From Octopus bimaculoides (Eukaryota): DNA of 37,421 bases. Where the stretch lies: contig NC_068983.1 in assembly GCF_001194135.2 (NCBI RefSeq), positions 108,477,338 to 108,514,758 of the forward strand. The letters are read 5' to 3'. This document shows positions 1 to 37,421 of this stretch, one piece after another; within the stretch, counting starts at the first letter, position 1; each line of letters opens with the position of its first letter. Both the position numbers and the translations under genes were made by a program. The notes under the pieces are model-generated. The model searched no databases. It had not been told where the DNA came from and saw nothing but the letters and a program-made list of their open reading frames with translations.

Positions 1-61
<61 letters not shown>

Positions 62-62
62 G

Positions 63-102
<40 letters not shown>

Positions 103-126
103 CATACACGTGTATATATACATATA

Positions 127-474
127 TATATGGCAAGAAGAAAATGGAGATAATCCAGAGGTAGTATTCATCAGCTGTTAGACATTATATTATGTCTATT
201 TATTAATTTAAAACAATTCTAATAATATATTTATACACGTGTAAAGTACTAGTAATTTCTAGAATAGAAAAAGAAAAGCAGTTTCTTTCAGCTGTTTCTG
301 CCAAAAGGTCACAGTACCACACATGTTATTACATTTTTTCAGTGTACTGTAGTGATCTGTAGATAAAATTAGGATACTTGGGTGTGTCTCTAGGCTTCGT
401 CAGATAGTTTATACGATAAACCAAGAAGTTCAGAGGGTTAATTTATGCATATATATGAATATATATACACACAC

Positions 475-518
<44 letters not shown>

Positions 519-1583
519 NNNNNNNNNNNNNNNNNNNNNNNNNNNNNNNNNNNNNNNNNNNNNNNNNNNNNNNNNNNNNNNNNNNNNNNNNNNNNNNNNN
601 NNNNNNNNNNNNNNNNNNNNNNNNNNNNNNNNNNNNNNNNNNNNNNNNNNNNNNNNNNNNNNNNNNNNNNNNNNNNNNNNNNNNNNNNNNNNNNNNNNNN
701 NNNNNNNNNNNNNNNNNNNNNNNNNNNNNNNNNNNNNNNNNNNNNNNNNNNNNNNNNNNNNNNNNNNNNNNNNNNNNNNNNNNNNNNNNNNNNNNNNNNN
801 NNNNNNNNNNNNNNNNNNNNNNNNNNNNNNNNNNNNNNNNNNNNNNNNNNNNNNNNNNNNNNNNNNNNNNNNNNNNNNNNNNNNNNNNNNNNNNNNNNNN
901 NNNNNNNNNNNNNNNNNNNNNNNNNNNNNNNNNNNNNNNNNNNNNNNNNNNNNNNNNNNNNNNNNNNNNNNNNNNNNNNNNNNNNNNNNNNNNNNNNNNN
1001 NNNNNNNNNNNNNNNNNNNNNNNNNNNNNNNNNNNNNNNNNNNNNNNNNTATATATATATATATATATATATACATACATACATACATATATATATTTCC
1101 TGTGTTAGGAAGGGTGTATTCCTGCAGTGGTTTGTATTTTCCTTGCATATAGATATACACATATGCATAAACATACGATGTGTTTATGGTTGAGGGTCTT
1201 TCACCCCCATCAGGGGGTGAAAGTTTATATTAATAGTTATGATAGCAGCTGGTACTAAAGGTAGTAAAGGTACTAATTCTCCAGGCAGTTACCAAGATAC
1301 TACATTAGGTTCTGTTAAAAAATAACAGAAGAAATAACAGCAGCTAATATAGTATCTTGGTAAACGCCCAGAGAATTACTACCTTTACTACCTTTAGTAC
1401 CAACTGCTATCATAACTATTAATATAAACTTTCACCCCCTTAATGAAGACATTGATTTCAGGCCCTCAACCATAGACACATTGCATGTTTATGTATATGT
1501 GTATATTTATATGCAAGGAGAATACGAACCACTACAGGAATACACCCTTCCTAACACATGAAATATGTGTGTGTATATGTGTG

Positions 1584-1626
<43 letters not shown>

Positions 1627-1841
1627 ATACGTATGTATATATATGTATTTCTCCTTTTATGTGCCTTTTCATTTCTATAAAAACTGTACCCCTCTCAAAC
1701 TCCAATATTTACTTCGATTATACTATCATTTCTCTTTCTCTTTTTATGCATTCTCTAATAAGAATATTCTACTACACCTACTAATAACTGATTCTGTTAT
1801 AAGTGTGTACATGCATATATGTATGTATGTATGTAAGGGTT

Positions 1842-1885
<44 letters not shown>

Positions 1886-2202
1886 TATATTAGCCCTCTG
1901 AACTTCTTGGACTATCTTATAAACTTTCTAACAAATCCTAGAGACACACCCAAGTACCCTAATTTTATCTACAGATCACTACAGTACATTGAAAAGATGG
2001 AAATAACATGTGAGGTACTGTGACGTCTTGGCAGAAACAGCTGTAAGTAAGTGCTTTTCTTTCTCTAGTCTAGAAATTACTAGTACTTTACACATGTATA
2101 TATATATTATCAGAACTGTTTTAAATAAATAAATAGACATAATATGTTTAACAGCTGATGATTACTACCTCTGGATTCCCTCCACTTTCTTTTTGCCATA
2201 TA
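127..2202. repeat. Giant diverged inverted repeat (fold-back) centred near 1310-1342
   Basis: 127-455 is the reverse complement of 1878-2202 (tatggcaagaagaaaatggagataatccagaggtagta vs tactacctctggattccctccactttctttttgccata). About 1093-1308 is the reverse complement of about 1343-1566. (TA)n tracts sit at mirror positions. Roughly 85-90% identity by eye. Confidence 0.93.
519..1049. other. Assembly gap (N run) in the left arm of the palindrome
   Basis: Run of N flanked by (TA)n. Confidence 0.99.
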
Positions 2203-2367
2203 AATTAAGGGTAAAACCACTTATTATTCTTTCCTAGTTATACTCAGTAGTGTAACTGCCATGCAATAACCAACACTTGTGTATTAATTGTGTATTCTAC
2301 CAGCAGTATATTGGATAGATACTATCTCTTAGTTGGTTGGATTCACAACCTCTAACACTCTTTGAAA

Positions 2368-2406
<39 letters not shown>

Positions 2407-2416
2407 NNNNNNNNNN
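2407..2416. other. Assembly gap within a (TA)n tract
   Basis: Run of N. Confidence 0.99.
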
Positions 2417-2449
<33 letters not shown>

Positions 2450-2451
<2 letters not shown>

Positions 2452-2710
2452 GTTATAATTTAGAAGAAGTAATAAACGGTTGTCAATACAGTAGTCAGAG
2501 CTTCAAATGTTGGAGTGAAGAACTACAATACATTCTTGTCAGCTATTTGTTTTCCACCTATTAGAGTTACTTCTCTTTCGTTCAATGGTTTTTCATAGCA
2601 TTTGTTGCTATTAATAGCCAATGAGAATGTATTGTAGCTCTTCGCTCTGACATTTGAAACTCTGAGTACTATAACGACAGCCTTTTACTGTGTGTTCTAA
2701 ATTATAACAT
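2450..2710. repeat. Diverged inverted repeat, arms about 95 bp, spacer about 65 bp
   Basis: atgttataatttagaa (2450-2465) matches ttctaaattataacat (2695-2710) exactly. 2477-2547 pairs with 2613-2682 at about 80% identity. Confidence 0.9.
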
Positions 2711-2774
2711 ATATAATCTTCTATTTCTCTAATATCGAGGTCTCATTCTTTTGTTACTTTTTATTATTATTATT

Positions 2775-2864
2775 ATATATGTATACATGTAAATATATAT
2801 ATATGTGTGTGTGTATGTGTGTGCGTATATATATATATATGCGTATATATATGCACATATATGC

Positions 2865-2935
<71 letters not shown>

Positions 2936-3005
2936 TGTATATATGTATATATATATATATATGTATGTATGTAAATATACATATATGTATACAATATATA
3001 TATAC
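2775..3005. repeat. Compound (TA)n/(TG)n microsatellite
   Basis: Directly visible; source of several spurious YIYI ORFs. Confidence 0.97.
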
Positions 3006-3027
3006 TATAATACGCCTATACTTTATA

Positions 3028-3188
3028 GGCGTAGGAGTGGCTGTGTGGTAAGTAGCTTGCTTACCAACCACATGGTCCCGGGTTCAGTCCCACTGCGTGG
3101 CATCTTGGGCAAGTGTCTTATACTATAGCCTCGGACCGACCAAAGCCTTGAGTGGATTTGGTAGACGGAAACTGAAAGAAGCCCGTCG

Positions 3189-3233
<45 letters not shown>

Positions 3234-3444
3234 TTGTGTGCCTGTGTTTGTCCCCCCAACATCGCTTGACAACCGATGCTGGTGTGTTTATGTCCCCGTA
3301 ACTTAGCAGTTTGGCATAAGAGGCCGATAGAATAAGTACTAGGCTTCCAAAGAATAAGTCCTGGGGTCGATTTGCTCGACTAAAGGTGGTGCTCCAGCAT
3401 GGCTGCAGTCAAATGGCTGAAACAAGTAAAAGAGTAAAAGAGTA
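3028..3444 (+). mobile_element. tRNA-derived SINE (family A), full length, with internal microsatellite
   Basis: A-box-like tggctgtgtggta, B-box-like ggttcagtccc, internal (TA)n/(TG)n, 3' tail gtaaaagagtaaaagagta. Same family at 3445, 13927, 34421 and 36470. Confidence 0.9.
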
Positions 3445-3725
3445 TAGTCTTAGTCCTATCAAAGCCTTGTGATTGGATTTCATAAGCAGAATCTGAAAGA
3501 AGACTGTCGTATATATATGTATATTTCTGTGTGTATGTGTTTGTACCCCACCATCACTTGAAAACTGATGTGTCTGTGCTTACATCCCCATAAATTAGCA
3601 GTTTGGCAAAAGACACCGATAGAATAAGTACTAAGCTTACAAAGAATAAATCTTGGGGTCAATTCGTTCAACTAAACACTGTGCTCAGTCACAGTCACAG
3701 GATTGAAACAGGTAAAACAATAGAA
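3445..3725 (+). mobile_element. Older 5'-truncated family A SINE directly in tandem
   Basis: Colinear with 3125-3440 (gatagaataagtact...aaagaataa...ggggtc) but more diverged. Confidence 0.8.
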
Positions 3726-4046
3726 AACTATGCCATGTTAATTCTGAGAAACTCCGAGTATCTCTGCTAGTTACAAATATTTATAGAGTAAAAATGCTAA
3801 AATTTTTGTATTTCATAGAAAAGGGATTCCTTAAGTGTCTATTTAAATATTCCGTTTGTGTATGAAACAAAGTTATTTTATTTAATTCTTAAGTAAGTAT
3901 ATACGGCTTTCCTCTCTATGTATTTAGAACTGTAGACTATCATGATGCAAAAGCCTTTATTTATAATAGATTTTTAAAAATGTATAAGGGAAATTAACTT
4001 AAAAATAGCATTTTAAAGGTGAAATCAATCCTAGTTTAGCCAAAAT

Positions 4047-9625: not shown

Positions 9626-10795
9626 CTCTTTCATTCAATTATTTTTGTCATAAGAAAAGAATCTGATGAAGTAGATAACTTCAATGGAAGCAGAAGACAT
9701 CTTTTGAAATAAAACTTATCAAGGTTTTCTAAATTCTTAAAAATTAGAATGGAAATAACAATGTCTGTTAATATTTTCCTGAATGAGTGTCAATTCTTCT
9801 GATAATTTTCTGAAATAAACAAATTGCATAGGAAATCAAATAAATGAAGAAATAAAGCACTTCAGCTTTTATTTCACAAAAGCAATTAGAAAGAAAATGT
9901 AAAAAGCTATTCCAACTGATCATTTTTTTTTTCTCTCAAAGAATCAATAGAAATTGGTTCGGTAAACCCAATTCCATAGAGGAATGTCTTAAAGTAATTA
10001 AAGATAGCCTGATATGTGTTCAGAAGAATAAAAGAAAATTACACTACATTTCTTAACATTTAAAATATTGATCAAACATCAAGAACATTGAATTGTTTAC
10101 TTCACAGAGAATATTCTTCATTTAAACTTGAACATTTTAAGTGACATTAAAAATTACAGTTAAACTCGCATGTTAAAAACATTCAATATTATTCACTTAT
10201 TATCTCATTTCAGATGGATAGATCTCTGGATTTATAAATGTAAAATAGTAAGGAAGAAGATAGAAAAACTAAATGAATGACTAACAATGAATAAATACAT
10301 GTAGATTTAACTCTTAATTGCATAACCCTGAGTAAGTTTGCTTAACTATTGAGAATGGGCAGTAGGTTTTCTGAGAATATCTTACAGTTTAGACTGTATT
10401 TTAAATCAAGTGGTGCTTTAACTCTTGTTGTCTTAATTCTGTAACATTAGTGTTAAATATTTGCTTTTATAGGTAGAGCATCCAATGATTGTACAAAAGT
10501 TTTGAAACTGGAGACATGAGATCCTATCAATTTACATACACATACATGCATACATACATAATACAAACATATATGCATATATATATATATACATACATAC
10601 ACAGCATAAGACGGTGCCATCAACATCAGATGTGCTGGTATAGAGGACTGTTTAAAATTTCCCTTTGCTTCAAAATTGCTGCTCTTGTACCTAAATTAGA
10701 AATACTTGTATTTTAATTTTTTCTGGTACTGCTATACAAAAGCTATAACATGCTAATTTAATTAGCAGAGACATCATCTTGAGGTTTGGTGACAA

Positions 10796-11065
10796 TTAGC
10801 TCTGGATCTCAAAAGTCTTTCTTATGATTCTTGCAGAGCACAGGATGATACATTTCTGCAGGACAACAGTATGTTACTTGATTCTAATATCTTTCAGCCT
10901 CTTAAGTTGCAGCTTGGGGGTTGTGCTAAGTGAACCAATTACCACAGTAACAGTTTTCATTTTTGTGTTTCACAATCTCTTCCTTTCTTAGATAATATCC
11001 TGATATTTCTCATGTCTTTTTCCAGTTTCATATGATAGTAAAATGGATTTGAAAGCCATTGTTAT
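10796..11065 (-). mobile_element. Decayed 3' end of an R4/Dong-like non-LTR retrotransposon (restriction-like endonuclease)
   Basis: Translation ...HEKYQDII*ERKRL*NTKMKTVTVVIGSLS...LQKCIILCSARIIRKTFEIQS* fits the K..KY.DL...V.G.LG...SARI.RK C-terminal REL pattern. Confidence 0.75.
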
Positions 11066-11246
11066 CTAAGTGACTGAAGGATATTTGAAATGAGGTATGT
11101 ACCGTCAACCTGTATAGCAATGCATTCCTGTATTTTGCAAAGATCTTAAGAAAGATTCTTGAGAACTCAGGTGACTTGTTTTTATCAAACTGCAAAACAA
11201 CATCCCTGCTAGCTAATATAACATGTAATAGCTACACAAAGCCTGA
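11066..11246 (+). mobile_element. Short R4/Dong-like 3' fragment, inverted relative to 11712-11892
   Basis: About 88% identical to the reverse complement of 11712-11892; encodes FAKILRKILENS. Confidence 0.85.
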
Positions 11247-11527: not shown

Positions 11528-11720
11528 AGTCAAGCTGGTAGAATTGTTAGCATGCTGGGAAAAATGCTAAGTGGCATTTCACCCATCCCTACGTTCTGAG
11601 TTCACATTCCACCAAGGTCAACTTTACCTTTCATCCTGTTAGCGGTCGATAAAATAAGTATCAGTTGAGCACTGAACTTGGTGTAATTAACAAGCCCCAG
11701 TTCCAAAATTTTCAAGCCTT
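11528..11720 (+). mobile_element. tRNA-derived SINE (family B)
   Basis: agctggtagaattgttagc head, gttctgagttcacattcc B-box-like, core actttacctttcatcct...gtcgataaaataagta. Same family at 16075 and 28604. Confidence 0.75.
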
Positions 11721-13085
11721 GTGTAGCTACTACATGTTACATTAGTTAGCAGGGATGCTGTCTTGCAGTTTGGTAAAAACAAGTCACTTGAATTCTCAAG
11801 AATCTTTCTTAGGATTCTTGCAAAATACAGGAATGCACTGTTATGCAGGTTGACAGTGCATGCCTCATTTCTAATATTCTTCAGCCACTTAGCAGTTTGG
11901 GTACTGTCATTTTCCTCTCTGTTCTTGAAGTTTTCCACTTTCCTGTAACATTTCTGTTATTTCTATCTGCCAGTAGTATTCTTTCTTCACTACATACAAT
12001 ATAGTTTTCAACCCAATATTGCAGTACTAATGGTGTCTTTGGGGTTTAACAATCCTCTTCCTCCTTCCTTTCTTGGTAAGTAAAGCTGTTGATATTACTT
12101 TTAAGGTGGTGTGCATTGTGAGCAGCTTCCTAGTTCTATCATAATTCCAGCAACAATGTCCATTCTAGAAAGAGAGCAGAGTATCTTAATACTAGCATAG
12201 TTCATGTGTTCATTGCTTTTATAATATTCCTTCTAATCTTTTAAAAAATAACTTCCTAATTTTTCTCCTGTATACTTTGGAGATTTTTCACTCTCATTTT
12301 CCTTTCCCTTATCCTATCATCCTGCAGCACACCTAGTCACTCGTATCTCTCATTATTTTTCAGAAATCTAATGATTCTCCCATAGTTTTCATTATGTCCT
12401 TACTTACCTTAAACTGTATTCCAATACAGTATCCAGGTCTTTTTCGTTTTTGACATGCAATTCAAGGCTACCCCATATATAACAAGTGCTTTATTTTCAC
12501 CCTGGTTTGTCAAACACATCTGCAGGCCTGGATTTTGTCAGTATGCTTATCAGAGGGATTAATGCAATGATGAAACGTAATGGAGAGAGCAAGTTTCCTT
12601 TGAATATCACTGGGCATATTTTCTCATTTTCTAACAAATCATTTGTGCATGTTAATTCTACCTCCCATGATCTCATTACTTTTTCTGAAAAACTGTTTAT
12701 CCTCTCATTGACCTCTCCCCACCAGCTGTTGTGAGCCACTTCAAAAGCCAACAATGCAGAACATTATCTTAAGCTTTCTTGTAGTCTTTCCAGTTAATAG
12801 CTAAGCTCTTTTTATTTGTACCTCATGCCATAAATATACAACAGATCAACAATTCCCCTTGACTTCTTTGTGCATCCCTTTACTGCTCTCATAATAGTTT
12901 CTTCTTCAGAAAGCTAAATACTTCATCAGCTACGAGGCCAGTTAATTTCAAGAGTAATGGTAAGCATGTAATAGGCCTATAAGTATTGACTTTACCTCCC
13001 TTTTCTGTATCCTTCTGTATTTGCAGTCTTTATTTTATGTCATCCACATGGGTGTTCCATTTTCTATATAATCAGTAAGAAATGG
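11712..13085 (-). mobile_element. Decayed, internally deleted R4/Dong-like LINE (RT plus C-terminus)
   Basis: YRPITCLP, IFKGNLLSPL (canonical IFQGDSLSPL), KIKHLLYMG (canonical NHLLYMDD), LYLPRKEGGRGLL, FARILRKILEN; many stops and frameshifts. Confidence 0.9.
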
Positions 13086-13926: not shown

Positions 13927-14288
13927 TCTTCTTTTACTTGTTTCAGTCATTTTGACTGCATCCATGCTGGAGCACCACCTTTTAGTCGAAGAAATTGACC
14001 CCAGGACTTATTCTTTATAAGCCTGCACTTATTCCAATGGACTCTTTTGCAGAACTGCTAAGTTACGGGGATGTAAATGCACCAACATCAATTGTCAAGT
14101 GATGGTGGTGGGGACAAACACACGCCCACGCACACATGACAGGTTTCTTTCAGTTTCTGTCTCCAAAATTCACTCACGAGGCTTTGGTCAGCCCAAGGCT
14201 ATAGTAGAAGATACTTGGCCAAGGTATCACACAGTGAGACTGAAACTGGAACCATGTGGTTGAGAAGCAAGCTTCTTACCACACAGCC
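13927..14288 (-). mobile_element. Family A SINE, near full length, internal microsatellite almost absent
   Basis: Reverse complement colinear with 3036-3440. Confidence 0.88.
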
Positions 14289-16074
14289 AAAGATACATTT
14301 TAGCTTATTTTACATGAGAGCATGAAAAATCACTAGCAATAAGTTCATCTGATCCAAGAAAACATTTTGGAAGAATAGAACTATAACTTTGTGTATAGCC
14401 ATGATGAATAAATAGGTAGCAAAAAGCTATTTCGGGTGCAAAATCAGCAAGAGGTTTACTTTCTCATGATGAACTGCTAAAGAACCAAAATATGAATATC
14501 TTGCACACTTTTTATATTTTATTTTGTCTATTGAATGAAAATTGTGTGCAAGACAAACTTTTGATGTCGTAAACTAATGCTGTGAGTCACTAAGTTGTAG
14601 GTTCTTAGAGAAAATCTACAGGATAGCATGTTTTATATACACATAAATATCTCTTATATTGTCCTTTCAAGAGGACCTGCTTTTAACTAGTAATGCTAAT
14701 CAAAATAGAACAAAATTTAGAAAACATTGATGGACCAAAGAATAACACTTACAAGTGCTACCCCTACTATACCCAGCATCTATCATCTTAAGGCAAACAT
14801 ATAAAATATGGAGAATTAAAAAAATGATGTCAGACTACATCTTAACTGAAATAAATTAGCAAATAAAAACAACTTTATAATATAGAAACAGAAAACTCCT
14901 AAAAGAATATGCATTAGAAATATAACAAAAGGACCATCCATACACAAAAATATTAGCTCTCATAATCCAATGAAAGAAGTATAACAGAATTAAACATTCA
15001 CTGAACCAACCATACACAGAACAGATGACCCTAACATCACAATGAAAATATGACAACAGAATCAACCATACATATAATGGATCATTCCTCTCAACATAGT
15101 GAAAATAACACATCAGATTTGACAACATACAAAAGAACAAGCCATCATAGCAAAACAAAAGCAGACACAAAAATAAATATAAAAGACCAAAAATAAAATA
15201 ATGAACACACATGAACACATGTGTATTCAACCATTTGAATACCTAACCTCAGGGAAACATAGTTACAACCCACACATTTTGCAACAAACAGAATTATCCC
15301 ACTTATAAGAATAGAATAAACAGAGAAAACCATGAAGAACATCTAACAGAAATAGTAAACAAAAAAATAAAACTGATCATGACAAAAGCAGTTCTCATAA
15401 ATCAATGGAAACACCTTCCAAAGTTAATAGTAAACAAATAATGCCAGCTAATAATAGCTAAATATAACCAGATCTCTAAGAAATCCCTTCCATAGAAACA
15501 AATCTGAACATCAATGGGTTAAATAACCTAATAGACACAGAACCATTGCTCTATCATGGGAAACTCTATTCAATACTAAAAGGGAAAATTACTTCTCAAC
15601 TAACCCTGCTGAAATATAGCAGATAGTAGGAGAAAGTACAAATAACAATGTAAAGAAAGGGTCGACATATCTATCCTTACTGAGAAAACTAGAATGGTGG
15701 GAATGAGGATAACATAATAAAATAGTAAGTGTAAAAATTGAAAAAAAAAATCATAATTTTGAGTAAAAGGAAGGTACCTTGGAAATGAAAGAAAAAGTTT
15801 TTAAAATATGATTCTAGTGAACACATGCCTGATAAAACTAACTGAAAAAAACTTGTTTTTTTTTTTCCAACAGAATCACCTATTTGAAAACTCAGAAAAC
15901 ACTTCGGGTACATCAATGAAAAAATTTATTACATTAGGAAATGTATCAATAAAAATATATTAAAGTATAATCAAGAGAAAATACTAAGGCTAAATATAGA
16001 ACACAATAAAGATGAACAAGGAGTTAAAGAAGTTACAACTTTTTAGACAAGAGTTTATGTGCTTTCTTTGACTC

Positions 16075-17769: not shown

Positions 17770-19185
17770 TTCTACTGAAATCATTTCTAAATACCTCAAC
17801 CTTATCCTCATAACTCTAGTGAATTCCCTCCCCTCACATATTCATGACACCAGCTGTGCTCTTCATCTCTTCAATACTTTTTCCTTTTCTCCCTCACAAT
17901 GAAGGCCTCTATTTCCTCAATCTTCATCCTGATCCTCAACCTGACACCTCTACCCTCCTCCATTTGGCTGAACTTGTCCTCTCTCTAAATTGTTTCTTGT
18001 TTGCAGGTAAAATTTACCATCAGGTCTGGGAGTGACCATGGAAATGAGAATGGACCCCAATTATGTGAACCTGTTCAACAGATATGTTGAGGCCCAAATG
18101 TTCTCTCAGTTCAGCGCTCTCATGCCTGAGCTAGATGGTCGTTACATCAATGGCTGTATCAGTTCAACCTCACTTTCCTGTAAACATCTCAGCTCACCTC
18201 TCTTTCATCCAGTCCTTCCATCCTGCCCCCATATTCTTCTGTTCTGGCTTCAACAACTCTATCAACATTCTTAACATTTCTGATACTATGTATCACTCCT
18301 CTCTTACCACCTCCATGCACTATAAGACCACAGACTTAGATTCTTGCCTCAACTTCTTCTCCCACCAAACTGTCCATTCCTTACTCTTAGTTCCTCCATC
18401 TTCACCAGCTCTGTAGGGAAGACCATGACTTCAAGACAGTCTGAACTCATGGCTCACCATTTCAGCCAACAGAAGTACCCCAACCATTATCCCAACCACA
18501 TTCACATTCACATGTGCCTGATCTGTTGACTGTGCATTTGCTCTCTCTCTCCCTATATCTATCTCACCTTTACTATATCTATCTCCCTATATCTATCTCT
18601 CTTTCCTGCTCACCCACAGCCCCTCCGTCCTATTCCTCCAATGCACCATTCTTCAGGATTTCTGCCCATTCCAACCTGACACTTACACTTCCCATCTATT
18701 CTTCAACTGACCCCTCCTTCAAATGTACCCATAACATTTGTGACCTTCTGGTCCATAGCTTCTTCCCCATTCCTGGCACCCAACCTGGCTCCTTACTTGC
18801 TCCCATCCTTCCTTGCACTTCCACACTTACCCCCACCTCTCTGGCATCTACCATTGCCCCATCTGCATCACTGATTCATAAACCTGCATCTCCAGCAGTG
18901 TAATCTATCCTCTGCTCTCTATGTAATATTCTATACATTGATCAAACTGGCTGGCAATTAGCTGATCCATTTGCTGAACATCTCTGGGACATCAGACTTG
19001 CCAATGACATCTCAGTCTTGTGTCACTTCAGCTCCTCCAGTCATTTGCAACAACATCAATTTGCATTTGGACTGGCCTTGTACAGAGGCCACCCAGACTC
19101 CCACCTCCATTGAGAACAGGAATTTAATTTCTCTCTGCATTCCTCAGTCCCACATGGTCTCAATTCATTGCTCCCCTTCATCTAA
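17770..19185 (+). mobile_element. Decayed Penelope-like element (RT plus GIY-YIG endonuclease)
   Basis: LPSHIHDTSCALHLF, LLHLAELVLSLNCF, TMEMRMDPNYVNLF (cf. GVAMG.RMGPSYANLF), HYKTTD, then CSLCNILYIDQTGWQLADPFAEHL and HFSSSSH (GIY-YIG); frameshifted. Confidence 0.88.
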
Positions 19186-19189
19186 ACCT

Positions 19190-19803
19190 GCTTCCACATG
19201 CATTTACACAGACCACACAAACCTCACCTTCCACTCCTCCTTTTCTTCTACACTCCTCACATTCTTTACACTATTATACTTAGTACTCACTCCATGCCAC
19301 TACAGCATATACTTGCACCTATACACATGGACACACACACACACACACACTCACACACACTCCTTCCCACTACACACATACCAGCATCAGTACTCTCCCA
19401 CATATTGTAACATGTATATAGTCACATGCTCACACTCCCAGTTCCTACCTCCTGTCACTCCTATTTCACCTCATGCCTCTATCCTGGTAGACTACCATAG
19501 ATTCCCCTACAACACATATATGTCAGATAGCCTCACATACACAAGCACTCTTACACGTACTTACATATGCACAAACACAGAATATACATATACATATCAA
19601 CTCCATACATAAACACTTTATCCCATAGTCCCATTTAAGAACACCATCTAAACACACTCTCACATACATAGATGCACACAAACACAATAAACACACATAA
19701 TAAACAAGCACACAACAGTGTCACACACACACATTTTATGCACGAACACACATATGTTCCAGTGCCTTTTACACACACACATCTGATAGCTTCACACACT
19801 CCT

Positions 19804-19843
<40 letters not shown>

Positions 19844-19845
19844 TA
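19190..19845. repeat. Degenerate CA-rich low-complexity tract
   Basis: Eroded (CA)n blocks; source of HT/CV-rich ORFs. Confidence 0.85.
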
Positions 19846-20135
19846 GCAAGGCTACTGTTATCTCTCTTACCATTCTTCTCTTCAATCCTTTCCTTCCAGT
19901 CAATTCAACATGTGCACCCATTAATCCAGACATGTTTTTCTCTCTCTCTCTCTCTCTCCATTTCATTTTTCCATCTCACCATCTCCTTTCTCACTTCGTT
20001 GCTTTCTGTAAAAAAGCATATGCTTGAAACATCAAAGACTCTTCCATTTTGCCTGAGCGTCAAACTAATACATCTTGCTTGTTGCTCCCTCACCTGTCTC
20101 TGCTTTTTGCTTTTTATACAATTTTGAACCATATA

Positions 20136-20381
20136 AATATTTTTTTTCATGGTGAAGGCTGGTATATGGGGCTACCCTGGTTTTCTTATCCATAAAGGGT
20201 TTAACTTTATGGCTTATCGTCAGATCTCAAGACCTGTTGGCCTATGACCACTTTAAAATATTTTAAAGAGGTCATAGGCCAACAAGCTTTGGGCTCTGAC
20301 AATACATCATAAAGTTAAACCGTTTATGGACGGGAAACTCAGGGTAACCGCATAAACTGGCTTCCAACAGGAAAAAATATA
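20136..20381. repeat. Zero-spacer palindrome, arms about 120 bp (MITE- or hairpin-like)
   Basis: Centre ctttaaaa-ta-ttttaaag (20251-20268); tgttggcctatgacc pairs with ggtcataggccaaca; gtttaactttatg pairs with cataaagttaaac; about 78% arm identity. Confidence 0.9.
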
Positions 20382-22311: not shown

Positions 22312-23186
22312 NNNNNNNNNNNNNNNNNNNNNNNNNNNNNNNNNNNNNNNNNNNNNNNNNNNNNNNNNNNNNNNNNNNNNNNNNNNNNNNNNNNNNNNNN
22401 NNNNNNNNNNNNNNNNNNNNNNNNNNNNNNNNNNNNNNNNNNNNNNNNNNNNNNNNNNNNNNNNNNNNNNNNNNNNNNNNNNNNNNNNNNNNNNNNNNNN
22501 NNNNNNNNNNNNNNNNNNNNNNNNNNNNNNNNNNNNNNNNNNNNNNNNNNNNNNNNNNNNNNNNNNNNNNNNNNNNNNNNNNNNNNNNNNNNNNNNNNNN
22601 NNNNNNNNNNNNNNNNNNNNNNNNNNNNNNNNNNNNNNNNNNNNNNNNNNNNNNNNNNNNNNNNNNNNNNNNNNNNNNNNNNNNNNNNNNNNNNNNNNNN
22701 NNNNNNNNNNNNNNNNNNNNNNNNNNNNNNNNNNNNNNNNNNNNNNNNNNNNNNNNNNNNNNNNNNNNNNNNNNNNNNNNNNNNNNNNNNNNNNNNNNNN
22801 NNNNNNNNNNNNNNNNNNNNNNNNNNNNNNNNNNNNNNNNNNNNNNNNNNNNNNNNNNNNNNNNNNNNNNNNNNNNNNNNNNNNNNNNNNNNNNNNNNNN
22901 NNNNNNNNNNNNNNNNNNNNNNNNNNNNNNNNNNNNNNNNNNNNNNNNNNNNNNNNNNNNNNNNNNNNNNNNNNNNNNNNNNNNNNNNNNNNNNNNNNNN
23001 NNNNNNNNNNNNNNNNNNNNNNNNNNNNNNNNNNNNNNNNNNNNNNNNNNNNNNNNNNNNNNNNNNNNNNNNNNNNNNNNNNNNNNNNNNNNNNNNNNNN
23101 NNNNNNNNNNNNNNNNNNNNNNNNNNNNNNNNNNNNNNNNNNNNNNNNNNNNNNNNNNNNNNNNNNNNNNNNNNNNNNNNNNNNNN
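22312..23186. other. Assembly gap (N run)
   Basis: Run of N; could hide exons. Confidence 0.99.
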
Positions 23187-23344
23187 GGTGAGGGGGGAGT
23201 TTCCATGGGACCACCCTACTCCACCCTCTCCGATTTCTGTGGAAAAAATCACTTGCAGGATATTAGATGAGATTAGTTGATAGCACAAGAGTAAAAAAAA
23301 AAGGGTAAAAACATTATTTCCCACCAAAATCGAGTTGGCTGTTA

Positions 23345-23668
23345 AACTGTCAAAGGCTTCCTCCAAGTCAACAAAAGCCAAGTACAGAGATTTATCTTTG
23401 GTTAGGTATTTCTCCTGCAGTTGCCTTACCAGAAATATAGCATCAGTGGTACTTCTGTTTTGCACAAAACCAAACTGCATCTCATCTAGGCTAACTCCCT
23501 CCCTAATTAGTTGGGCTATGATCCTCTCTGTAACTTGCATCACCTAATTCAATAATTTGATACTCTGTAGTTACTTCTATCTAAAGCATCACCTTTCCCC
23601 TTGTAGCAGTTGACTATGGTGCTGCTACACCAATCATCCGGTATGACTCCTTCATGAACAACCTGATT
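23345..23668 (-). mobile_element. Internal RT fragment of a younger RTE-clade LINE
   Basis: NQVVHEGVIPDDWCSSTIVNCYKGKGDALDRSNYR, then a frameshift, then DEMQFGFVQNRSTTDAIFLVRQLQEKYLTKDKSLYLAFVDLEEAFD. Confidence 0.93.
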
Positions 23669-23909: not shown

Positions 23910-24807
23910 AAAACTTACGTGGTGTTCAATCATATAATAATATAAATAATATATATGTATATGCATATATACATACGTATATGTACATACTTACATCTAT
24001 ACACATATATATATATATATATATATATANNNNNNNNNNNNNNNNNNNNNNNNNNNNNNNNNNNNNNNNNNNNNNNNNNNNNNNNNNNNNNNNNNNNNNN
24101 NNNNNNNNNNNNNNNNNNNNNNNNNNNNNNNNNNNNNNNNNNNNNNNNNNNNNNTATATATATGCATATGTGGGCACAGGACGTGATGAAACGTGTACGA
24201 CAAATAAGTATGAAGCACGAGTACATGGAACATGAACTATTCCTTCGAATAATGAAAGACACAAATGGAAAGCAAAACAAACAACATAAAGAATGACCCC
24301 ACATCAGTTGTTGGCTGTTTTTCTAGTCTCATATTTCAAGCATTTAACAACAATATATGCTTTCGATAAAACAGTTGCTCCTGCAAAGCAAATTAAATAA
24401 AATTTTGGATTTTTTGGAGGGTCAAAATTGGTAACATAAACAGGACAGTGTAAACAAACAGGAAGGGTTGCTAAGCCTAAACGAGGTTATGGTGGCAAAT
24501 GCATAAATCAAAATTGGACAAGAGACAAACAAGAACACGTCTTCTTTGTTCCAGCTACAAGTGAGACAAAGAAAGAATGATGGCTGATGGTTACGTGATA
24601 GTCATGTGAGCAAAGGAGGAGGAGTGAGACGGAGAGAGTGACAAAGTAATAGGATAGACTAGTGGGAGAAGAGGAGGTAAAAGAATAAGGGAGAGAAAAA
24701 GAGAGTATAATGAAAGAGTAAAAAGATTGTATAGAGTGCGCATCAGAATTATTAAGATAAAACTTACTTGGAAGAGGATGCGTGGTGTTCAATCACAATA
24801 TAATAAA

Positions 24808-24862
<55 letters not shown>

Positions 24863-37193: not shown

Positions 37194-37384
37194 CTATTAG
37201 TGTACAGGTGGATGATTGTGAAAATGAGATAAAAACTTGTCAACAGTTTCTACTAAATTAAACTTCCCAAAATAAACTCTCAAAGATGAAATGAAAGAAA
37301 GATGAAAGAAACGAAGAGTCTATGTCAAATATATGAGTTTTATAATATATATAAATATACACCCACATGTGCATATATATATAT

Positions 37385-37421
<37 letters not shown>

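What the first reader, a model, noticed from the sequence alone, without database searches (positions are those of the whole stretch)
127..2202. About 2.1 kb nested fold-back palindrome with mirrored microsatellites
Seen: unique blocks and the (TA)n tracts between them are mirrored around 1310-1342, at about 85-90% identity. The centre has its own hairpin (ttctgtta-aaaaa-taacagaa) and a duplicated aaataacag. Divergence argues against an assembly duplication. Inference: one inverted duplication of already-mosaic DNA, not a simple MITE. It predicts that the N gap (519-1049) holds the reverse complement of about 1640-1810, and that DNA upstream of the window may mirror 2200-2370.
Basis: partly seen in the sequence, partly recalled or inferred. 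Interest (0 to 1): 0.7.

Follow-up and report, generated by a model that had tools for sequence, protein, structure and literature searches.

The report
Two-tier inverted repeat among TA microsatellites
A real but old and non-coding double inverted repeat sits in a cluster of TA microsatellites in a gap-ridden animal scaffold. It is most likely decayed foldback or MITE-type transposon DNA, and an assembly gap hides the one stretch that would show whether it is a single 2-kb palindrome.

Summary
Positions 131-448 and 1891-2198 are inverted copies (blastn E 1e-132, 10.1% mismatches). Positions 1097-1563 form an almost spacerless 467-bp palindrome (E 1e-168, 10.4% mismatches, DNA fold -181 kcal/mol, z = -33.6). 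TA-type microsatellites sit at matching places on both sides.

Both tiers have the same divergence (K2P 0.109 and 0.114). That fits a single origin but does not prove it.

The 195-bp block 1649-1843 has no visible partner, because its predicted mirror would fall in the N gap at 519-1049. Both gap edges are pure TA repeat, so continuity across the gap rests on scaffolding alone. As drawn, the two tiers are not concentric: the left spacer is 648 bp and the right is 327 bp.

The window starts and ends in TA repeats, so it is probably a whole scaffold with no "upstream" to inspect.

Four more palindromes or inverted repeats lie in the same 37 kb, several of them next to TA tracts. I therefore favour foldback/MITE-like mobile DNA (about 0.5). 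This could be a palindromic element nested in the TA-rich core of a long-armed element, or one long foldback element. Independent copies or a scaffolding error get about 0.1 each.

No known RNA family, no coding capacity, no matches in public collections. Interest is low to moderate.

The parts
1..130 (.). Imperfect (TA)65 tract. It abuts the left end of the outer arm and is the start of the window, probably the scaffold end.
   Evidence: TRF 1-131, period 2; sequence
131..448 (+). Outer left arm. It begins TGGCAAGAAG and ends ...CAGAGGGTTAATTTATGCATA at the TA tract.
   Evidence: blastn with 1815-2205, E 1e-132; alignment; 31/307 mismatches
449..518 (.). TA microsatellite running into the gap
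   Evidence: TRF 449-518; gap edges
519..1049 (.). Assembly gap of 531 N (estimated length) with TA repeat on both edges. Content unknown.
1050..1096 (.). (TA)12 followed by (CATA)n, on the left of the inner palindrome
   Evidence: TRF 1050-1096
1097..1308 (+). Inner left arm. It begins TTCCTGTGTTAGGAAGGG.
1309..1343 (.). Centre: an 8-bp stem with a 5-nt A loop (1310-1330), plus a 12-bp tandem duplication (1320-1331 and 1332-1343)
   Evidence: read directly; fold
1344..1563 (-). Inner right arm. It carries an indel patch at about 1448-1468 relative to the left arm.
1564..1648 (.). TG/TA microsatellite on the right of the inner palindrome
   Evidence: TRF 1572-1648
1649..1843 (.). Unpaired unique block X. 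It has no inverted or direct partner in the window and no terminal inverted repeats of its own.
   Evidence: read
1844..1890 (.). TA microsatellite on the inner side of the outer right arm
   Evidence: TRF 1844-1890
1891..2198 (-). Outer right arm. It ends ...CTTTTTGCCA and is followed by TATA and then unique sequence.

Best explanation
This is decayed, non-coding foldback/MITE-type mobile-element DNA lodged in a TA-microsatellite cluster of an AT-rich, repeat-rich animal genome. I see two forms of this reading.

(i) Nested elements, about 0.3. An element of roughly 0.9-1 kb has arms of about 310 bp (131-448 and 1891-2198) and a TA-bordered core that includes block X. A 467-bp palindromic element (1097-1563) later landed in one of its internal TA tracts.

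(ii) One element, about 0.2. The whole stretch 131-2198 is a single copy of a foldback element with arms of about 1 kb, and the missing mirror of X lies in the gap.

Either way the proposed mechanism is cut-and-paste insertion at TA within (TA)n. The tract then ends up split on both sides of the insert and can be hit again, so blocks come to be separated by TA tracts. The copy is old (about 11% arm divergence) and has no coding capacity. It probably does nothing now, apart from being cruciform-prone DNA that breaks short-read assemblies.

Shown: the two inverted-repeat tiers, their equal divergence, the TA tracts, and the other palindromes in the window. Inferred: mobility, TA targeting, and the order of events.
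For: 1. Palindromes are common here. Besides the two tiers, the 37-kb window holds 2449-2710, 20138-20381, 35600-36092 and the inverted repeat 11066-11246/11712-11892. The inner palindrome matches them in size (244-493 bp) and in being spacerless. That density is expected of dispersed element families rather than one-off rearrangements.

2. The arm unit of the inverted repeat at 11 kb has a third, older copy at 10741-10918 (68-70% identity). At least one such arm therefore belongs to a repeat family.

3. Four of the 12 palindrome termini abut an imperfect TA tract, against 5.8% expected (binomial P about 0.004). This test is post hoc and two of the four termini belong to this locus. TA tracts are about four times denser in 1-3.2 kb than in the rest of the window.

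4. There are precedents for the mechanism. SaTar/Micron elements are 380-1900 bp with inverted terminal repeats up to 250 bp. They are flanked by TA microsatellites and stacked in arrays (PMC5907723). MuTAnT elements are foldback Mutator-like elements that insert into (TA)n (PMC4486113). Sleeping Beauty transposase prefers ATATATAT, and some of its variants are 24- to 43-fold enriched in TA-rich simple repeats (PMC8934666).

5. Reading (i) explains the unpaired block X and the unequal spacers (648 vs 327 bp) without assuming anything about the gap.
Against: - No second copy of either arm or of X exists in the window.
- No unambiguous target-site duplication can be called. TATA on both sides is trivial next to a TA tract.
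- No transposase or autonomous partner was found.
- The equal divergence of the two tiers (K2P 0.109 vs 0.114) is a coincidence under nesting. A nested insert should if anything be younger. I estimate it favours a single origin by roughly 3- to 4-fold.
- The outer element has a long TA tract on its left only; on the right there are just 4 bp. That is awkward for insertion into the middle of a tract.
- The association with TA tracts rests on 12 termini chosen after looking.
- The known TA-microsatellite-targeting families are all from plants.
Confidence: 0.5

Rival explanations
1. One local fold-back (inverted) duplication. A roughly 1-kb stretch that already held TA tracts (outer unit, TA, X, TA, inner unit) was copied back on itself by hairpin priming or a replicative template switch near 1318-1322. 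Synthesis returned to the original template after copying a few bases of the flanking TA tract. The arms have drifted about 10% since, and a 12-bp tandem duplication arose at the centre.
For: - The two tiers have identical divergence (31/307 vs 22/212 mismatches, Fisher P = 1.0), whereas the other palindromes range from K2P 0.14 to 0.33.
- The blocks and TA tracts are in collinear order on both sides.
- The palindrome runs to a 5-nt loop.
- The flanks are asymmetric: 130 bp of TA on the left but only TATA on the right. This is what a copy that stops just inside the TA tract would leave.
- The gap lies exactly where the mirror of X would be. A 195-bp block between two long TA tracts would be dropped by a short-read assembler.
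Against: - The mirror of X is unseen.
- The spacers are 648 vs 327 bp as drawn, so the left TA tracts must have gained about 320 bp or the gap estimate is wrong.
- Four other palindromes or inverted repeats in 37 kb argue for element families rather than repeated one-off events.
- Copy number in the genome is unknown.
Confidence: 0.28
2. The arrangement is a coincidence. The two outer arms are separate copies of a roughly 310-bp dispersed repeat that happen to lie in opposite orientation, with an unrelated palindromic element between them. All of them were collected by a TA-microsatellite-rich region.
For: - The 11-kb locus shows three copies of one unit in alternating orientation within 1.2 kb.
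- TA tracts are dense across 1-3.2 kb, and further unrelated blocks continue to the right: 2203-2370 and 2449-2710.
- Arrays of unrelated elements separated by TA tracts are known in plants (PMC5907723).
Against: - A single outer arm has no terminal inverted repeats of its own.
- No further copy lies in the other 35 kb.
- The equal divergence of both tiers would be a coincidence.
Confidence: 0.1
3. Scaffolding artefact. The 518-bp first contig (TA tract, arm, TA tract) was placed or oriented wrongly by read pairs. The outer 'palindrome' would then not be contiguous in the real chromosome. The inner palindrome is still real.
For: - The left arm is joined to the rest only across an N gap whose edges are TA repeat.
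- The contig is short, repeat-bounded, and lies at the probable scaffold end.
Against: - The arms differ by 10% plus indels, so read pairs should place them uniquely.
- The inner palindrome and the right arm lie in one gap-free contig, 1050-2406.
Confidence: 0.1

Closest known systems
TA-microsatellite-targeted non-autonomous Mutator-like elements of plants: SaTar, Micron, MuTAnT, TAFT (PMC5907723, PMC4486113)
   Same: - Small non-coding elements of 380-1900 bp with long inverted terminal repeats, up to 250 bp and sometimes nearly the whole element.
- Flanked by (TA)n, with target-site duplications unreadable in the repeat.
- Several unrelated blocks strung together with TA tracts between them.
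- The inner palindrome (467 bp, arms about 215 bp, TA-type tracts on both sides) has this anatomy.
   Different: - All described families are from plants, and their membership rests on terminal-repeat similarity to a Mutator-like transposase-bearing element. None is seen here.
- SaTar arrays are described as strictly non-nested, whereas here one inverted repeat encloses another.
- Blocks X (1649-1843) and 2203-2370 have no inverted terminal repeats.
- Copy number is unknown.
Palindromic MITEs and foldback elements of animals, for example zebrafish Angel, Drosophila FB and Galileo (FB/Galileo context: PMC3573991 abstract; the rest from my own knowledge, not tested)
   Same: Non-coding elements that are inverted repeats over most of their length, form long hairpins, and occur at high density.
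   Different: - FB and Galileo arms are built of tandem sub-repeats. TRF finds none in these arms apart from the TA tracts.
- No family consensus, target-site duplication or transposase link could be tested.
Fold-back inverted duplications and template-switch mutations
   Same: Arms meet at a very short spacer, divergence is equal along the arms, no target-site duplication is needed, and the junction may show microhomology (here TATA).
   Different: - The described cases are either tens of bases long (template-switch mutation clusters) or many kilobases at chromosome ends.
- A 2-kb interstitial case carrying internal microsatellites would be unusual.
- It requires single-copy arms, which could not be checked.

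Membership tests
MITE / foldback non-autonomous DNA transposon | Terminal inverted repeats that bound the element | tested here: met
   Outer 131-448 vs 1891-2198 and inner 1097-1308 vs 1344-1563
MITE / foldback non-autonomous DNA transposon | Target-site duplication of a fixed length | tested here: inconclusive
   TATA on both sides of the outer pair and TA-type repeat on both sides of the inner one. Both are trivial in TA-repeat context, and an 8-bp match is only 6/8.
MITE / foldback non-autonomous DNA transposon | Many dispersed copies in the genome | not testable with these tools
   No further copy in the 37-kb window. The source genome is not in any searchable collection: exact ORF look-ups failed and all DNA scans returned 0 hits.
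MITE / foldback non-autonomous DNA transposon | Small size and no coding capacity | tested here: met
   The only ORFs are low-complexity read-through of microsatellites.
TA-microsatellite-targeted Mutator-like elements (SaTar/Micron/MuTAnT) | TA microsatellite on both flanks | tested here: inconclusive
   Inner palindrome: yes (1050-1096 and 1572-1648). Outer pair: a 130-bp tract on the left but only TATA on the right.
TA-microsatellite-targeted Mutator-like elements (SaTar/Micron/MuTAnT) | Terminal repeats similar to an autonomous Mutator-like element; 9-10 bp duplications in copies that lie outside microsatellites | not testable with these tools
   No autonomous element and no other copies are available.
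TA-microsatellite-targeted Mutator-like elements (SaTar/Micron/MuTAnT) | Linear arrays in which no element interrupts another | tested here: not met
   The outer arms enclose the inner palindrome and block X, so the arrangement is nested or a single palindrome.
Drosophila FB / Galileo-type foldback | Arms made of internal tandem sub-repeats | tested here: not met
   TRF reports only the dinucleotide tracts in 1-4000.
Local fold-back inverted duplication | Arms meet at a short spacer or none | tested here: met
   5-nt loop at 1318-1322 once the 12-bp tandem duplication is discounted.
Local fold-back inverted duplication | Uniform divergence along the whole arm | tested here: met
   K2P 0.109 (outer) and 0.114 (inner); Fisher P = 1.0.
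Local fold-back inverted duplication | Unbroken collinearity of both arms, including the mirror of 1649-1843 | not testable with these tools
   The expected position is inside the N gap 519-1049.
Known structured RNA gene (miRNA or other hairpin RNA) | Match to an Rfam family at its gathering score | tested here: not met
   No match at gathering score. The sub-threshold hits are all microsatellite-type miRNA models (mir-297, mir-466 and the like) lying on the TA/TG tracts, not on the arms.

The most novel reading that the evidence does not exclude
TA microsatellites in this animal genome (possibly a cephalopod) may act as landing pads for foldback-type transposons, building nested or modular arrays. 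That behaviour has so far been described only for plant Mutator-like elements. Alternatively, TA tracts may seed local fold-back duplications, producing the many long hairpins seen here. Either reading would link the genome's microsatellite load mechanistically to its stock of palindromes.
Probability: 0.2. Interest if true: 0.5.

Novelty: new member of a known kind. Interest (0 to 1): 0.25.

Why it matters
As a single locus it matters little. It is old, non-coding repeat DNA, and its main practical effect is to break short-read assemblies.

It would matter more if the pattern held across the genome. Long palindromes sitting against TA microsatellites would then indicate one of two things: microsatellite-targeted transposition in an animal, or a microsatellite-driven route to new hairpins. 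Both bear on how repeat-rich genomes generate inverted repeats, fragile sites and possibly hairpin-RNA precursors. Testing this needs the whole genome, not this window.

Tried and rejected
1. Recovering the source contig or a second assembly.
- Exact look-ups of 11 window ORFs found nothing.
- The best relatives of the reverse-transcriptase fragment are only 61-70% identical.
- The one contig I fetched (L001) shares only that reverse-transcriptase gene with the window, at 71% DNA identity.

2. Exact-pattern scans with conserved 20- to 25-mers from both arms. Metagenome contigs, prokaryote genome contigs and viral contigs all gave 0 hits. A SINE 23-mer in viral contigs also gave 0. These collections are not expected to hold animal DNA, so the result is uninformative.

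3. Structured RNA.
- Rfam at gathering score found nothing.
- The permissive run hit only microsatellite-type miRNA models on the TA/TG tracts.
- No tRNA genes were found.

4. Assembly duplication or allelic contig. Rejected because the arms differ by about 10% plus indels.

5. Target-site duplications. These cannot be called in TA-repeat context.

6. A shared terminal motif among the palindromes. I saw only a purine-rich CAAGAAGAAA shared by 131-148 and 35600-35620, which is too weak to use.

7. Phase across the gap. T falls on even coordinates on both edges, so a pure TA run would fit 531 N. The length is only an estimate, so this means nothing.

8. Organism. The SINE at 3024-3447 resembles, from memory only, an abundant octopus SINE. 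I did not test this.

Full report
**What the window is**

The 37,421-base window is AT-rich (GC mostly 0.27-0.36). It contains eight runs of N. It has 28 perfect (TA)>=6 tracts, plus GT, GA, GATA and ATT microsatellites. It also carries several copies of a SINE-like repeat and a decayed non-LTR reverse-transcriptase fragment. No tRNA gene and no Rfam family reaches threshold. This is non-coding DNA of an animal genome assembled from short reads. From memory the SINE resembles an octopus SINE, but I did not test that.

The window begins in a 131-bp TA tract and ends in a TA tract. Seven of the eight gaps have a microsatellite on at least one edge, and four have TA repeat on both. I infer that the assembly breaks at microsatellites and that the window is probably a complete scaffold. 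If so, there is no "DNA upstream of the window" in this record.

**Checking the observation**

blastn of 1-2500 against the window gives two strong minus-strand matches and nothing else of note:
- 124-518 with 1815-2205, at 86% over 400 columns, E 1e-132.
- 1050-1607 with itself, at 83% over 567 columns, E 1e-168 (repeat finder agrees).

Global alignments put the ends of the outer pair at 131 (TGGCAAG...) and 2198 (...CTTGCCA), with TATA on either side. The inner arms are 1097-1308 and 1344-1563.

With microsatellites trimmed off, the outer arms differ at 31 of 307 aligned bases (K2P 0.109). The inner arms differ at 22 of 212 (K2P 0.114). These are indistinguishable (Fisher P = 1.0).

As single-stranded DNA the inner unit folds into one hairpin of -181 kcal/mol, against -40.8 +/- 4.2 for shuffles (z = -33.6).

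There is an 8-bp stem, TTCTGTTA and TAACAGAA, around AAAAA at 1318-1322. There is also a 12-bp tandem duplication, with AAATAACAG at 1320-1328 and 1332-1340. Without that duplication the palindrome runs right up to the 5-nt loop.

TA-type tracts sit at 449-518, 1050-1096, 1572-1648 and 1844-1890.

**Qualifications to the observation**

- (TA)n is self-complementary, so mirrored TA tracts only mean tracts at corresponding places.
- The two tiers are not concentric as drawn. The left spacer (449-1096) is 648 bp, of which 531 are N of estimated length. The right spacer (1564-1890) is 327 bp.
- The outer pair's midpoint therefore falls near 1165-1170, not 1326. Exact mirroring would need a gap of about 210 bp, or about 320 bp of extra TA repeat on the left.
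- Block 1649-1843 (X) has no partner anywhere in the window. Its predicted mirror would lie in the gap.
- Both gap edges are pure TA repeat. The left arm, which sits in a 518-bp contig bounded by repeats, is joined to the rest by scaffolding evidence that I cannot see.

**Surroundings**

The locus is not unique in kind. The same 37 kb holds these others:

| Coordinates | Type | Arm divergence |
|---|---|---|
| 2449-2710 | spacerless palindrome | 25% |
| 20138-20381 | spacerless palindrome | 22% |
| 35600-36092 | spacerless palindrome | 26% |
| 11066-11246 / 11712-11892 | inverted repeat around a SINE-like insert | 12% |

The arm unit of the last one has a third, older copy at 10741-10918.

Four of the 12 termini of these structures abut an imperfect TA tract, where 5.8% would be expected (P about 0.004). 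All four are left termini. The test is post hoc and two of the four belong to this locus.

TA tracts are about four times denser in 1-3.2 kb than elsewhere. Unrelated blocks separated by TA tracts continue to the right of the finding, at 2203-2370 and 2449-2710.

**What it most likely is**

I weigh four readings.

1. Mobile-element DNA of the foldback/MITE type (about 0.5 in total). This has two forms:
   - a 467-bp palindromic element nested in an internal TA tract of a long-armed element of about 0.9-1 kb whose core includes X (about 0.3);
   - or one long foldback element with arms of about 1 kb (about 0.2).
3. Two independent copies of a dispersed repeat in opposite orientation around an unrelated palindrome (about 0.1).
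4. A scaffolding error in the placement of the first contig (about 0.1).

For the mobile-element reading:
- The density of similar palindromes in the window.
- The repeat-family behaviour of the 11-kb unit.
- The association with TA tracts.
- Clear precedents. SaTar/Micron elements of guayule and rice are 380-1900 bp, have inverted terminal repeats up to 250 bp, are flanked by TA microsatellites and are stacked in arrays (PMC5907723).
- MuTAnT elements of Medicago are foldback Mutator-like elements that insert into (TA)n, where target-site duplications cannot be read (PMC4486113).
- Sleeping Beauty transposase prefers ATATATAT, and single substitutions make it 24- to 43-fold enriched in TA-rich simple repeats (PMC8934666).
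- Nesting also explains the unpaired X and the unequal spacers without any assumption about the gap.

For the single-duplication reading:
- The two tiers have the same divergence, while the other palindromes spread from K2P 0.14 to 0.33. I estimate this favours a single origin by about 3- to 4-fold.
- The order of blocks is collinear.
- The centre is spacerless.
- The flanks are asymmetric: 130 bp of TA on the left and only TATA on the right. That is what a copy ending just inside the TA tract would leave.
- The gap lies exactly where a short block between two long TA tracts would be lost by an assembler.

The long-foldback-element form shares these structural predictions with the single duplication. 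Only copy number can separate them.

**What could not be done**

The source genome is not in any collection I could reach.
- Exact ORF look-ups failed.
- The reverse-transcriptase fragment's best relatives are 61-70% identical, and the contig I fetched is unrelated.
- Scans of metagenome, prokaryote and viral contigs with conserved arm 20- to 25-mers returned nothing.

Copy number, gap content and orthologous sites therefore remain open. They are the decisive tests.

**Function**

There is no coding capacity. No known RNA family matches. The only sub-threshold Rfam hits are microsatellite-like miRNA models on the TA/TG tracts, all far below their gathering scores. The arms have drifted about 10% and the centre has picked up a tandem duplication, so there is no sign of constraint. 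I regard the structure as inert repeat DNA. It remains capable of cruciform or hairpin formation and is responsible, with its TA tracts, for the assembly breaks.

**Verdict**

The kind of structure is known. Interest is low to moderate. It would be higher only if a genome-wide survey showed a systematic link between TA microsatellites and long palindromes in this animal.

Noticed in passing
window 1-131 and 37373-37421; gaps at 519, 2407, 22312, 24030, 25499, 27149, 29578, 36375: The window starts and ends in TA repeat. Seven of the eight N gaps have a microsatellite on at least one edge, and four have TA on both edges. The assembly breaks at microsatellites, so the window is probably a whole scaffold.
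   Followed up: partly
window 2449-2710, 20138-20381, 35600-36092: Three further spacerless palindromes of 244-493 bp, with arms 22-26% diverged. Two of them have a TA tract directly on their left end. They are unrelated in sequence to each other and to the finding.
   Followed up: partly
window 10741-10918, 11066-11246, 11712-11892: Three copies of one unit of about 180 bp in alternating orientation within 1.2 kb. The younger inverted pair is 88% identical, and the third copy is 68-70% identical to either member of that pair. A SINE-like segment and an (ATT)12 tract lie between the younger pair.
   Followed up: partly
window 3024-3447, 3443-3731, 13930-14289, 34425-34834, 36434-36622: A SINE-like family of about 420 bp with a tRNA-like head and an internal TA/TG microsatellite. 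Copies are 75-87% identical, and one pair is in partial tandem. ARAGORN and Rfam do not call the head. From memory it resembles an octopus SINE; I did not test this.
   Followed up: no
window 23187-23650 (minus strand): A decayed non-LTR reverse-transcriptase fragment (RVT_1 relatives) with a frameshift and stop codons, cut off by the gap at 22312-23186. The best database identity is 70%.
   Followed up: partly
window 18000-20100: About 2 kb that is G-poor and C-rich on the plus strand (GC 0.42-0.45, GC skew -0.45 to -0.62). It stands out from the rest of the window, has no obvious repeats and no convincing coding frame. Unexplained.
   Followed up: no
window 23918-24317 and 24781-25105: A direct duplication with a period of about 0.8 kb (81-90% identity). 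It straddles the gap at 24030-24154 and includes TA and GATA microsatellites.
   Followed up: no
window 446-517, 1566-1645, 1811-1899, 2366-2454: The TA/TG microsatellites give sub-threshold Rfam hits to mir-297, mir-466, mir-3149 and mir-1277 (up to 57 bits against gathering scores of 81-100). These are low-complexity artefacts, not miRNA genes.
   Followed up: yes
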